From the NCBI GenBank assembly GCA_002269645.1, contig NIVC01000317.1, forward strand, positions 395,705-459,704: a stretch of DNA of 64,000 nucleotides, in the 5' to 3' direction. Below the pieces are notes generated by a model. That model was not told the DNA's origin. It searched no databases and saw only the letters and a program-made list of their open reading frames with translations. The position numbers were made by a program, and so were the translations under genes. Positions 2,637 to 5,004 of this stretch are shown piece after piece. The stretch comes from Macrostomum lignano. Its lineage: Eukaryota. Positions within the stretch are counted from its first letter, which is position 1. Each line of letters starts with the position of its first letter.

Positions 2637-2846
2637 CTAGAGGATCCGGTATTTCTGCCCGCTGCTGCCGCTCCCGCTGAGCACCTTCTGCTGGCGGCTT
2701 CTCAGTTTAGCCAGAGCCATCGTGAGCAGCAGAACAAGCAACAGTACGATGCAGGCCATCGCGCACACAGCCGCCAACATCACCCAGTTGTACAGGGACA
2801 GCAGCAGCTCTTTGTCCGACTTGGCATGGCCGGCGCTACCGCAAGG
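2637..2846 (-). CDS. DNASE2: Deoxyribonuclease II, terminal exon: QPC end of the nuclease domain, transmembrane helix, cytosolic tail ending YRIL
   Basis: Acceptor cgacag|CCT (phase 0) gives PCGSAGHAKSDKELLLSLYNWVMLAAVCAMACIVLLLVLLLTMALAKLRSRQQKVLSGSGSSGQKYRIL*. The junction recreates the Q-P-C seen at the end of mammalian DNase II. 210 nt. Confidence 0.72.
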   Translation of the reverse strand, partial: PCGSAGHAKSDKELLLSLYNWVMLAAVCAMACIVLLLVLLLTMALAKLRSRQQKVLSGSGSSGQKYRIL

Positions 2847-2946
2847 CTGTCGGGTGGTTAATGGTGGCTTAAAAACTTTGGCTTCTGTTAGATAAGCTGC
2901 TTACAGATTATGGCTGCGATACAGGTAGGTGCAGCCATGCAGTACG

Positions 2947-3276
2947 TGTCTAACAGGTGGAACCATATTCCAGAGGGTGACACACACTGTCTAACAGGTG
3001 GAACCATATTCCAGAGGGTGACACACACTGTCTAACAGGTGAAACCATATTCCAGAGGGTGACACACACTGTCTAACAGGTGGAACCATATTCCAGAGGG
3101 TGACACACACTGTCTAACAGGTGGAACCATATTCCAGAGGGTGACACACACTGTCTAACAGGTGGAACCATATTCCAGAGGGTGACACACACTGTCTAAC
3201 AGGTGGAACCATATTCCAGAGGGTGACACACACTGTCTAACAGGTGGAACCATATTCCAGAGGGTGACGCACTGTC
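2947..3276. repeat. 41-bp minisatellite in DNase II intron 2
   Basis: 8 nearly identical head-to-tail copies of TGTCTAACAGGTGGAACCATATTCCAGAGGGTGACACACAC, no spacers. Confidence 0.95.
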
Positions 3277-3392
3277 TACTAAGTTGGAAATAACAGCAAA
3301 TGGTTTAATTAACTGAAGCACTGAACAGCTGAACAGCCAATAATAGCTCGTAGCAACTGCAATACCAAACCAATTGCCCCAGTCAGCATCAC

Positions 3393-3674
3393 CTGGTCGT
3401 GGATCACGGCCGCTTTAAACAGTCTGTGAAGTCCGACGAGGCCGATGCAAGCGATGCCGCCTCCCCGGTGATACTGCGTCTCTGCCCGGTTCATGTCGCC
3501 GATGCACGTGTGCGGCTTGGCATCAGTCTGGGCAGTCACGCACCACTTCGAATGGTCCTTTGTAGACTTAAACTGCGTCTGGTTCCCGATGCGAACATCG
3601 AGCACTTTGGTGACATTGTAGCGCCTGTTGCATGTCGAATTCAGCAGCTCTTTGCCGTGCTGCCAGGTTTCTAC
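3393..3674 (-). CDS. DNASE2: Deoxyribonuclease II, coding exon 2 (second catalytic motif DHSKW)
   Basis: Acceptor ttttacgcag|GTA; VETWQHG...KDHSKWCV...CIGDMNRAETQYHRGGG...IHDQ; donor CAG|gtgatg; 282 nt, phase 0-0. Confidence 0.93.
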
Positions 3675-4249
3675 CTGCGTAAAACACAAAACGCAAAACT
3701 ACCGATTACATGTAAAACAAAAAATTTACTAAAAATTTTGTAAAACTGCACTTCTTCTTTTGTAGAAGTATTGAAGTATAGAAGTATCTAAAAAACACAT
3801 TTTTTTACAAATCAGTACAAAATATCTGATAATTCTGTACGTGCAGCCACGGAAGAATTAGGACACTATACAGTTGGTTTCTTAGAAATGAACCGGAAGG
3901 AACATATATTTGTAGTATCACTGGTGTATTTACTACTCTAGAGCTGAATGGGGTTTGGCCATAGACTAATTCAGTCGAGAAAAGTCCGCTTTTTCTATAA
4001 TAACATTCAAATGCGCTAGCGATCCTGCTAATCCGCTGGATTCCCTACCTGCCTTAAGATCATTTCTAAGAAAATCGAGTGCAACTGTCCTTTTACTGCA
4101 ATTTTCGATGCGTGCAACTCAGATCCGGAGTAAAGTGAGGTTTGGCCTTTATTTAATTTTCTATACATGTGAAACGCGAGATTCACGTCATTATACAACG
4201 GGTCATTTCCAGTGATCCCACTGGATGTGATCCCACAGAAGCAATATAC

Positions 4250-5004
4250 CTGAATGTTCGACTGAAGCTGACCAGCCAACAGGTAAGAATACAGGTCCTG
4301 CTTCAGGTGCGGAGACTTGGCCAGGTGCATCACGGACAGGCCACCGGAGGTCACCAGCTTGACAGTGGAATTCATCAAAGCCTTCGGTGGCTGCTTCCGT
4401 TTCTTCAGATCTGCCCAGCTGGGCCAGGCGGCCTCGGCGGCGGGGCTGACGCTGAGGCTGTAGAGGTCCGGGTGCGAGACGAACAGCTGGCTGCCGATGA
4501 TGTTGGCCATCTTTGCGCTGTCCACGGTCAGGCAAAGGAAGCTCTGGCCGTATTTCATCCCAGTGTCCGGGTACTCGTAGCGATGCAGGCTCATGTTCGG
4601 GAACTTTGGCACGCTGTGGATCAGCCAGAAGCCTTTCTGGCCAGACTTCAAAGCGACGAGCCCTTTCATGTGGCCGAACGCGCTGCTGCCGATGCTGCTG
4701 CTGTTGTTGTCCTCTGGCGGCTCGTCGTTGTACGCGGCCAGAACATCGGCGGCGGCATTGGAGCCGGCCTGCAGGACCTGGCTGACGGTGCTGAACACGG
4801 GCCATCCCGGGTGATGTCGCAGCCATCCGGCTGAATCCAGGCGGTTGACGAATTCGAGCTGACGTAGGCGTAGTGTCCGGAGTGCGGCTGCTTCAGCAGA
4901 GCGAACCAGTCCAGAGGAAAGCCATCGGCATCCAAGCACTGGAACTCGGCTGATGCAGCATGAACCAGCCAGGCTGATAGCGATAAAACAAATTTGTAGT
5001 TCAT
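4250..5004 (-). CDS. DNASE2: Deoxyribonuclease II, coding exon 1 (signal peptide, first HxK motif; contains a 1-bp frameshift near 4800)
   Basis: ATG at 5004: MNYKFVLSLSAWLVHAASA-EFQCLDADGFPLDWFALLKQP. After the frameshift: YNDEPP...GHMKG...GFWLIHSVPKFP...YGQSFLCLT, all DNase II hallmark motifs. Donor CAG|gtatat at 4250. Length 755 nt, one base short of 252 codons. Confidence 0.93.

What the first reader, a model, noticed from the sequence alone, without database searches (positions are those of the whole stretch)
2637..5004. DNase II with a C-terminal transmembrane anchor and a terminal YxxL sorting motif
Seen: a phase-0 third exon (2846-2637) continues the nuclease domain through Q|PC, then encodes ~25 hydrophobic residues (WVMLAAVCAMACIVLLLVLLLTMAL), a basic stop-transfer segment (KLRSR) and a tail ending QKYRIL*. 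Established: characterised animal DNase II enzymes are soluble acid nucleases of the PLD superfamily, and YxxPhi at a cytosolic C-terminus is the AP-adaptor signal of LAMP-type lysosomal membrane proteins. Inference: a type I membrane-tethered DNase II routed to endolysosomes or phagosomes, or cycling via the cell surface. Skipping this exon leaves an intronic read-through form (…HDQVMLTGAIGLVLQLL…CFS*), so isoforms are possible.
Basis: partly seen in the sequence, partly recalled or inferred. Interest (0 to 1): 0.7.

Follow-up and report, generated by a model that had tools for sequence, protein, structure and literature searches.

The report
Membrane-anchored DNase II gene of a flatworm
This is a DNase II (acid DNA-degrading enzyme) gene of the flatworm Macrostomum lignano whose last exon adds a membrane anchor and a short tyrosine-motif tail. 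That layout is rare for this normally soluble enzyme, it is already present as uncharacterised database entries, and the copy in this window carries a one-base frameshift.

Summary
On the minus strand, exons 5004-4250, 3674-3393 and 2846-2637 encode a full-length DNase II (PF03265, E 2e-84). After the domain's last conserved cysteine come an 18-residue stalk, a 26-residue hydrophobic helix, a KLRSR stop-transfer segment and a 23-residue tail ending YRIL*.

The window is M. lignano Mlig_3_7 contig NIVC01000317.1. Transcript-guided gene models at this locus and at two 98%-identical paralogous loci all end in exon 3.

It is 755 nt long, with a 1-nt deletion (CCC at 4801-4799, where the paralogues have CCCC). 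The annotated product here is therefore a 303-aa N-truncated protein. This is probably an uncorrected error from PacBio long-read sequencing, but that is unproven.

An AlphaFold model (pLDDT 90) shows a DNase II fold, one long helix (356-403) and a disordered tail.

Among 252 sampled DNase II proteins, only this flatworm cluster and three protist sequences have a TM plus tail. Cestode homologues end soluble.

The YRIL motif lies 19 residues from the membrane and has no preceding Gly. That matches an endocytic signal better than a LAMP-type one.

Best reading: a type I membrane-bound acid DNase delivered to endolysosomes, much as lysosomal acid phosphatase is. Sorting and activity are untested. 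I rate it a new variant of a known kind, of modest interest.

The parts
4250..5004 (-). Exon 1 of the DNase II gene. ATG at 5004-5002. Encodes the signal peptide and the first PLD-type half-domain (residues 1-252 of the intact protein). 755 nt in this window.
   Evidence: tblastn of P0001 aligns residues 1-70 in one frame and 69-253 in another. The donor is CAG|GTATAT.
4948..5004 (-). Signal peptide coding region: MNYKFVLSLSAWLVHAASA, with an A-S-A cleavage context before E20.
   Evidence: Read from the sequence. The model shows a helix at 2-17. Conserved Cys23 follows, as in homologues. Heuristic only; no SignalP was run.
4799..4801 (-). Frameshift site. A CCC run here corresponds to CCCC in paralogous loci L001 and L002 and in the coding sequence implied by P0001 (..DGPVF..).
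   Evidence: this is the only difference across the 755 nt of exon 1. Searches show the frame change.
4664..4672 (-). First catalytic motif, H112-M113-K114. The ATG of M113 (4669-4667) is the start codon of the truncated 303-aa product annotated at this locus.
   Evidence: H112 and K114 are invariant in the 40-sequence alignment. P0049 begins MKGLVAL.
3675..4249 (-). Intron 1 (GT...AG), 575 nt, GC 0.37.
3393..3674 (-). Exon 2, residues 253-346. Holds the second catalytic motif, D292-H293-S294-K295 (H293 at 3554-3552), plus GDMNR and RGGG.
2847..3392 (-). Intron 2 (GTGATG...GACAG). Contains a 41-bp tandem repeat with 8 copies at 2947-3272.
   Evidence: The array is about 32-34 units long in the paralogous loci.
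2637..2846 (-). Exon 3, residues 347-415 plus the stop codon. Encodes P347-C348 (the end of the DNase II domain), the stalk, the TM helix and the cytosolic tail.
   Evidence: It is 100% and 99.5% identical to the paralogues.
2709..2786 (-). Transmembrane segment: WVMLAAVCAMACIVLLLVLLLTMALA (residues 367-392).
   Evidence: Kyte-Doolittle maximum 3.16. Lies within the AlphaFold helix 356-403, with pLDDT 86-97.
2640..2708 (-). Cytosolic tail: KLRSRQQKVLSGSGSSGQKYRIL (23 residues). YRIL is at 2651-2640 and the stop codon at 2639-2637.
   Evidence: Residues 405-415 have pLDDT below 50, i.e. disordered.

Best explanation
The locus is one of three near-identical copies of a Macrostomum lignano gene (Mlig011103). 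The gene encodes a type I membrane-bound DNase II.

The proposed mechanism is as follows. A cleavable signal peptide takes the catalytic domain (residues 20 to about 350) into the ER lumen. That domain has seven N-glycosylation sequons, both HxK motifs and all the conserved cysteines. The helix at residues 367-392 stops transfer, and KLRSR holds the 23-residue tail in the cytosol. The terminal YRIL is read by clathrin adaptor mu subunits. The protein is then taken from the cell surface and/or the TGN into endosomes, lysosomes and phagosomes, where the acid nuclease cuts DNA. It may work while tethered, or after proteolytic release at the 18-residue stalk, as happens for lysosomal acid phosphatase and PLD3.

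Shown here: family membership, conserved catalytic residues, exon structure, the hydrophobic helix and motif, and gene models derived from transcripts.

Inferred, not shown: topology, adaptor binding, destination, cleavage and enzymatic activity.

The copy in this window has a 1-nt deletion in exon 1. That is most likely an unpolished homopolymer error in a triplicated region.
For: - Family: PF03265 matches over its full length (profile positions 1-326 of 326), E 2.3e-84. All invariant residues of a 40-sequence alignment are present, including H112/K114, D292/H293/K295, N314 and the cysteines.
- Structure: the AlphaFold model has pLDDT 89.9 and pTM 0.82. It shows the domain, a single helix at 356-403 and a disordered tail. 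The top Foldseek hits are Burkholderia thailandensis DNase II, 5i3e/5unb, TM-score 0.75 (sequence hit).
- Exon 3: it carries the conserved Cys348 and has coding-type GC3 of 0.81. Both introns have GT-AG boundaries.
- Gene models: GenBank models PAA94095.1, PAA85566.1 (both 415 aa) and PAA85587.1 (303 aa, this locus) all end in QKYRIL. The Mlig_3_7 annotation was built from RNA-seq and de novo transcripts using StringTie, TACO and TransDecoder (PMC5730564). The independent ML2 assembly gave the same 415-aa protein, A0A1I8GCS4.
[quoted passage not shown] The C-terminal YQTI of LAMP1 drives its endocytosis (PMC10916873). PLD3, another PLD-superfamily lysosomal nuclease, is made as a TM precursor and cleaved to a soluble domain (PMC12684396).
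Against: - No reads were inspected, so junction 3393/2846 rests on the published transcript-guided annotation.
- No dedicated TM or signal-peptide predictor was available.
- The YRIL context is not that of lysosomal GYxxPhi signals: it is 19 residues from the membrane, has Lys at -1 and has no acidic X residue. A YxxPhi somewhere in such a tail is expected by chance about 1 time in 6.
- The three copies are too similar for a selection test: 0-1 substitution in exon 3.
- No orthologue from another Macrostomum species was found to show that the tail is conserved.
- This particular copy is frameshifted as assembled.
Confidence: 0.6

Rival explanations
1. This locus is a pseudogene copy. The 1-nt deletion in exon 1 is real, and the gene here makes at most an N-truncated, signal-less fragment. 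That fragment would lack the first ~112 residues, including catalytic H112, although K114 is kept. The membrane-anchored enzyme would be made only from the two intact paralogues.
For: Exon 1 is 755 nt, with CCC against CCCC in L001 and L002. GenBank annotates only a 303-aa product here. The sequenced DV1 line carries duplicated chromosomes, so redundant copies are free to decay (PMC5730564).
Against: The deletion is the only difference in 755 nt and lies in a homopolymer. That is the typical residual error of a PacBio/Canu assembly, and Pilon polishing is hampered by multi-mapping among three 98%-identical copies. The ML2-derived protein A0A1I8GCS4 carries this locus's diagnostic residues (R335, A354) and is intact.
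Confidence: 0.3
2. The protein works mainly as a cell-surface ecto-nuclease, for example on gut or epidermal cells facing ingested diatoms, bacteria or extracellular DNA. YRIL would then serve only for turnover by endocytosis, and the lysosome would not be the site of action.
For: The spacing of YRIL from the membrane (19 residues) is that of endocytic signals, not lysosomal ones. Type I topology would display the catalytic domain outside the cell. Some DNase II relatives in other animals act extracellularly: secreted Trichinella DNase II-like proteins and venom DNase II-like proteins appear among the papers listed.
Against: DNase II enzymes have an acidic optimum near pH 5.2 and work in late endosomes and lysosomes (PMC12684396). 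LAMP1, LAMP2 and LAP also pass over the plasma membrane yet function in lysosomes.
Confidence: 0.12
3. The TM tail is an annotation artefact. Exon 3 would be wrongly joined to the DNase II gene, for example through a chimeric or mis-assembled transcript, and the true protein would be soluble and end in intron 2.
For: No reads were examined here. The read-through ORF (..HDQVMLTGAIGLVLQLLRAIIGCSAVQCFS*) exists.
Against: The read-through form lacks the nearly invariant Cys at the conserved distance from RGGG, and exon 3 supplies it exactly. Exon 3 has the same GC3 as exons 1 and 2, while intron 2 does not. Two independent assemblies and annotations, and three loci, give the same C-terminus. No other gene is called near exon 3.
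Confidence: 0.04
4. The hydrophobic stretch is a GPI-attachment signal and not a TM helix.
For: Some DNase II homologues in the sample do end in a bare hydrophobic stretch preceded by small residues: P0006/P0051 and P0191.
Against: Here the hydrophobic segment is followed by 23 hydrophilic residues that begin KLRSR. GPI signals end with the hydrophobic stretch itself (established knowledge). The model gives a continuous 48-residue helix.
Confidence: 0.02

Closest known systems
Animal DNase II / DNase II-alpha, DLAD, C. elegans NUC-1/CRN-6 (Pfam PF03265, PLD superfamily)
   Same: Full-length domain match, both HxK catalytic motifs, the conserved Asn and cysteines, an N-terminal signal peptide and multiple N-glycosylation sequons. 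The predicted fold matches the solved bacterial DNase II.
   Different: Characterised members, and all animal homologues sampled here, end about 25-40 residues after RGGG and are soluble. This protein adds 67 residues: a stalk, a TM helix and a tail. Identity to any non-Macrostomum homologue is 39% or less.
Lysosomal acid phosphatase (LAP/ACP2)
   Same: A luminal acid hydrolase made as a type I membrane protein with a short tail bearing a YxxPhi signal. This is the closest analogue for how the flatworm protein probably works: transport via the cell surface, then possible release of the luminal domain (PMC10916873).
   Different: An unrelated enzyme fold (histidine acid phosphatase). Cleavage and routing are demonstrated for LAP and untested here.
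PLD3 / PLD4 lysosomal 5' exonucleases
   Same: PLD-superfamily nucleases of the endolysosome, synthesised as glycosylated single-pass membrane precursors and processed to soluble luminal enzymes (PMC12684396).
   Different: They have type II topology (N-terminal anchor), are sorted by ubiquitination into intraluminal vesicles and not by YxxPhi, are exonucleases acting on ssDNA, and belong to a different PLD subfamily.
LAMP-1/LAMP-2 C-terminal GYxxPhi signals
   Same: A YxxPhi motif at the extreme C-terminus of a type I protein's short cytosolic tail (LAMP1 414-YQTI-417).
   Different: Lysosomal signals lie 6-8 residues from the membrane and have Gly before Tyr. Here the distance is 19 residues and Lys precedes Tyr.
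Predicted TM-bearing DNase II of protists (P0094 Hemimastix kukwesjijk; P0105 EukProt transcript; P0193 JGI contig)
   Same: A DNase II domain followed by a single C-terminal TM helix and a charged tail.
   Different: The tails have no sequence similarity and no shared YxxPhi motif. In a neighbour-joining tree the flatworm protein does not group with them, so independent gains are likelier. None has been characterised.

Membership tests
DNase II (PF03265) | Match to the family profile above the curated threshold and over its full length | tested here: met
   283.8 bits against a cut-off of 23, profile positions 1-326 of 326, E 2.3e-84.
DNase II (PF03265) | Two HxK catalytic motifs plus the conserved Asn (PLD-type active site) | tested here: met
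   H112-M-K114, H293-S-K295 and N314 fall in invariant columns of the 40-sequence alignment. The role of these motifs is described in PMC12684396.
DNase II (PF03265) | Conserved cysteine framework, including the C-terminal Cys | tested here: met
   C23, C158, C309 and C328 are invariant; C267 and C348 are conserved in at least 90% of sequences. C348 is encoded by exon 3.
DNase II (PF03265) | DNase II fold | tested here: met
   AlphaFold model with pLDDT 89.9. Foldseek top hits are 5i3e and 5unb, E 8e-21, TM-score 0.75 normalised by target length.
DNase II (PF03265) | Metal-independent endonuclease activity at acid pH, giving 3'-phosphate ends | not testable with these tools
   Needs a biochemical assay.
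DNase II (PF03265) | An intact reading frame at this locus | tested here: not met
   1-nt deletion at 4801-4799 relative to the paralogues. Whether it is real or an assembly error was not resolved.
Type I single-pass membrane protein | An N-terminal signal peptide, one C-terminal hydrophobic helix of about 20 residues or more, and basic residues on the cytosolic side | tested here: met
   Hydropathy 3.16 over residues 367-392, followed by KLRSR. The AlphaFold helix spans 356-403. The signal-like N-terminus has an ASA|E cleavage context. Heuristics only; no DeepTMHMM, Phobius or SignalP was run.
Tyrosine-based (YxxPhi) adaptor-sorted cargo | YxxPhi in an accessible cytosolic segment | tested here: met
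   Y412-R-I-L415 at the C-terminus, in a segment with pLDDT below 50.
Tyrosine-based (YxxPhi) adaptor-sorted cargo | Binding to AP mu subunits, and tyrosine-dependent trafficking | not testable with these tools
   Needs a binding assay or a Y412A localisation experiment.
LAMP-type lysosomal GYxxPhi signal | Gly before Tyr, 6-8 (6-9) residues from the membrane, often with acidic X residues | tested here: not met
   Lys at -1, 19 residues from the TM, X = R and I. Criteria are taken from PMC4584282.
LAP-like membrane-bound precursor of a soluble lysosomal hydrolase | Proteolytic release of the luminal domain in lysosomes | not testable with these tools
   An 18-residue stalk (349-366) with a low-confidence stretch at 351-354 is compatible with cleavage, but that is not evidence for it.
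GPI-anchored protein | The hydrophobic stretch lies at the very C-terminus, after a small-residue omega site | tested here: not met
   23 hydrophilic residues follow the hydrophobic segment.

The most novel reading that the evidence does not exclude
M. lignano delivers its acid DNase to phagolysosomes as an integral membrane precursor, sorted by a cytosolic tyrosine signal. The usual route for a soluble lysosomal enzyme is receptor-mediated (mannose-6-phosphate type). This would be the first animal DNase II shown to be membrane-bound. It would have arisen by gain of a terminal exon, independently of similar TM-bearing DNase II proteins in protists such as Hemimastix. That pattern would point to a recurrent evolutionary route for keeping an acid nuclease in the digestive compartment of phagocytic cells.
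Probability: 0.45. Interest if true: 0.45.

Novelty: new variant of a known kind. Interest (0 to 1): 0.35.

Why it matters
DNase II is treated as a soluble lysosomal enzyme. A naturally membrane-tethered animal version would be a second example, after lysosomal acid phosphatase and alongside PLD3/PLD4, of a luminal hydrolase delivered as a membrane precursor. It would also give a simple genetic handle (Y412A or a TM deletion) for studying lysosomal enzyme sorting in a flatworm that digests food intracellularly and already has transgenesis.

The practical value is modest. The enzyme family and the sorting logic are both well known, the protein models are already public, and nothing here challenges current understanding.

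For annotators, the 303-aa product at this locus should be flagged as the result of a probable homopolymer indel.

Tried and rejected
- Exact-sequence lookup of P0001 in the assembly index found nothing. The cluster members P0048, P0049 and P0050 did give the three loci.
- The first word-indexed homologue search returned only 47 hits. I suspect, but did not test, that low-complexity words from the TM and Ser/Gly stretches filled the candidate list. A search with a trimmed-domain profile gave 132 hits.
- A search seeded with a cestode homologue showed that cestode DNase IIs end soluble. No planarian, trematode or other Macrostomum sequences were retrieved, so the age of exon 3 within flatworms remains open.
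- A selection test on exon 3 was abandoned because the paralogues differ by 0-1 substitution there.
- Literature searches found nothing for Macrostomum plus deoxyribonuclease II, for the gene ID Mlig011103 (main text and two supplements), or for five 'membrane-bound/transmembrane DNase II' phrases. An intestine-gene paper does not mention DNase or lysosomes.
- The GPI-anchor reading and the 'exon of another gene' reading were considered and rejected; see the rival explanations.
- A weak Pfam hit to a capsid domain (PF22031, 18 bits, below its cut-off of 27) was ignored as noise.
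Full report
**What is in the sequence**

On the minus strand of window 2637-5004 there is a three-exon gene.

- Exon 1 (5004-4250) starts with ATG. It encodes a signal-like N-terminus (MNYKFVLSLSAWLVHAASA|EF) and the first half of a DNase II domain. Its donor is CAG|GTATAT.
- Exon 2 (3674-3393) follows the acceptor ...TTTTACGCAG. It encodes the second half of the domain, with DHSKW, GDMNR and RGGG, and ends ...VIHDQ|GTGATG.
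- Exon 3 (2846-2637) follows ...CCCGACAG in phase 0. It reads PCGSAGHAKSDKELLLSLYN / WVMLAAVCAMACIVLLLVLLLTMALA / KLRSRQQKVLSGSGSSGQKYRIL*.

Exon 1 is 755 nt long, so the ATG frame and the frame that reaches the donor differ by one base. tblastn with the intact public protein switches frame between 4801 and 4795. Comparison with two paralogous loci shows a single difference across all 755 nt: CCC at 4801-4799 here, CCCC there.

**Identity of the window**

The spliced model, with X at the frameshift, is 100% identical to UniProt A0A1I8GCS4, 'Deoxyribonuclease II', Macrostomum lignano, 415 aa.

Its 90% cluster holds three GenBank proteins of the Mlig_3_7 assembly:
- Mlig011103g1 (PAA94095.1, 415 aa)
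- Mlig011103g3 (PAA85566.1, 415 aa)
- Mlig011103g2 (PAA85587.1, 303 aa)

The g2 locus (NIVC01000317.1) is 100% identical to window 1-10669. The window is therefore from M. lignano. The product annotated here is a 303-aa protein that starts at ATG 4669, just after the frameshift, and ends QKYRIL.

The other two loci are about 98% identical in DNA and encode the intact 415-aa protein with the same tail.

**Is exon 3 really part of the gene?**

Four lines of evidence say yes.

1. Its second codon is Cys348. This is the last conserved cysteine of the DNase II domain, invariant in a 29-sequence alignment and at least 90% conserved in a 40-sequence one. It lies 26 residues after RGGG, as in homologues (24-27 residues). 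The read-through form would lack it.
2. Exon 3 has GC 0.605 and GC3 0.81, like exon 1 (0.59/0.80) and exon 2 (0.57/0.73). The introns and the 3' flank have GC 0.33-0.47.
3. The GenBank annotation of Mlig_3_7 was derived from RNA-seq and de novo transcripts (STAR, StringTie, TACO, TransDecoder; PMC5730564). At all three loci it ends in this exon. The independent ML2 assembly gave the same protein.
4. No other gene is called near exon 3. The nearest neighbour is a PCI-domain gene on the other strand, beyond the window start.

I did not see reads, so the junction evidence is indirect.

**Family and fold**

- PF03265 matches over its whole length, E 2.3e-84.
- All invariant columns of the alignment are satisfied: H112/K114, D292/H293/K295, N314 and the cysteines.
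- An AlphaFold model built on the 40-sequence alignment has mean pLDDT 89.9 and pTM 0.82. The globular domain runs to about residue 345. There is a low-confidence linker at 351-354, a single continuous helix at 356-403, and a disordered tail at 405-415.
- The best structural matches are Burkholderia thailandensis DNase II (5i3e/5unb, E 8e-21, TM-score 0.75). Distant PLD-superfamily members (Tdp1, PLD) follow (sequence-level hit).

**Membrane anchor and motif**

The hydrophobic stretch at 367-392 scores 3.16 on a 19-residue Kyte-Doolittle window. It is followed by KLRSR, consistent with a type I topology in which the tail is cytosolic. Seven N-x-S/T sequons lie in the luminal part.

The tail is 23 residues long, and YRIL forms its last four residues.

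By the published rules, lysosomal YxxPhi signals sit 6-8 residues from the membrane, often have Gly before Tyr and have acidic X residues. Endocytic signals sit 10-40 residues away (PMC4584282). Here Tyr is 19 residues from the membrane, follows Lys, and has R and I at the X positions. The motif therefore looks like a generic endocytic signal and not a LAMP-type one.

This does not exclude a lysosomal destination. LAMP1, LAMP2 and LAP all travel via the plasma membrane and depend on YxxPhi for endocytosis (PMC10916873). A YxxPhi at exactly the last four residues has a prior probability near 1%, and one somewhere in the tail about 16% (my estimate from typical residue frequencies). Alone, the motif is only suggestive.

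**How common is the architecture?**

An exhaustive phmmer search found 2258 cluster representatives with E ≤ 0.001, of which I could see the best 150. Adding the three word-indexed searches, I examined 252 DNase II family proteins with complete C-termini.

- The median distance from GDINR to the C-terminus is 44 residues. Here it is 105.
- Apart from the M. lignano cluster, a TM plus charged tail occurs only in P0094 (Hemimastix kukwesjijk transcript), P0105 (another EukProt protist transcript) and P0193 (a JGI contig).
- P0006/P0051 and P0191 end in a bare hydrophobic stretch, which looks like a GPI signal.
- P0175 looks like an intron read-through.
- No other animal sequence in the sample has a TM. 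That includes cestode DNase IIs from Echinococcus, Taenia, Hymenolepis, Anoplocephala and Rodentolepis.
- In a neighbour-joining tree of the domain, the flatworm protein sits with animal-like sequences and not with the protist TM forms. This is weak evidence for independent gains.

No planarian, trematode or other Macrostomum sequences were retrieved.

**Most likely mechanism**

The protein is a membrane-bound precursor, or a permanently tethered form, of an acid DNase. It would be delivered to endosomes, lysosomes and phagosomes by adaptor recognition of the tail, probably via the cell surface.

The closest working analogues are:
- lysosomal acid phosphatase, a luminal enzyme made as a type I membrane protein and cleaved on arrival;
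- PLD3, a PLD-superfamily lysosomal nuclease made as a TM precursor and processed to a soluble domain (PMC12684396).

The 18-residue stalk, with its low-confidence stretch, is a plausible cleavage site. Topology, routing, cleavage and activity are all inferences.

**The frameshift**

Mlig_3_7 is a Canu assembly of PacBio reads polished with Pilon. The sequenced line carries duplicated chromosomes and 180 Mb of blocks that are at least 95% identical.

A single missing C in a C4 run, in one of three 98%-identical copies, is a typical unpolished error. The ML2-derived protein with this copy's diagnostic residues (R335, A354) is intact.

I rate an assembly error at about 65-70% and a genuine pseudogenised copy at about 30%.

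**Novelty and verdict**

The protein models have been public since 2016-2017 under generic names. I found no paper describing a membrane-bound DNase II, or this gene.

This is a new variant of a known kind. A specialist in lysosomal biology would find it a neat but unsurprising variation. Interest: 0.35.

Noticed in passing
window 4799-4801 (minus strand): A one-base deletion (CCC against CCCC in the two paralogous loci) breaks the DNase II reading frame in exon 1. It explains why GenBank annotates only a 303-aa product at this locus. It is probably an unpolished PacBio homopolymer error.
   Followed up: partly
window 2947-3272; L001 7746-9057; L002 7746-9139: Intron 2 of the DNase II gene holds a 41-bp tandem repeat. 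There are 8 copies here, but the array spans about 1.3-1.4 kb (roughly 32-34 copies) in the two paralogous loci. This is either large copy-number variation or a collapsed assembly.
   Followed up: partly
window 34796-46808: A 12-kb array of a 10-bp unit (TCCTGACTCT, about 1190 copies, 89% matches) with strong GC and AT skew.
   Followed up: no
window 12668-15666 and 22867-23525: Long tetranucleotide arrays: (ATAG)n of 3 kb and (TGAG)n of 0.66 kb. Together with dozens of 12-58-bp minisatellites they make much of the window tandem-repetitive. This is in line with the published 15% simple/tandem repeat content of this genome.
   Followed up: no
window 26112-26801 (minus strand): An ORF of 229 aa with a GDNF/GAS1 domain match (PF02351, E 2.5e-7, 31.8 bits against a cut-off of 22). 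It is possibly an exon of a GAS1/GFR-alpha-like gene.
   Followed up: no
P0094, P0105, P0193 (proteins, not in the window): Predicted DNase II proteins with a C-terminal TM helix and charged tail in protists (Hemimastix kukwesjijk, another EukProt transcriptome and a JGI contig). P0006, P0051 and P0191 have GPI-like hydrophobic C-termini. Membrane attachment of DNase II may have arisen several times.
   Followed up: partly
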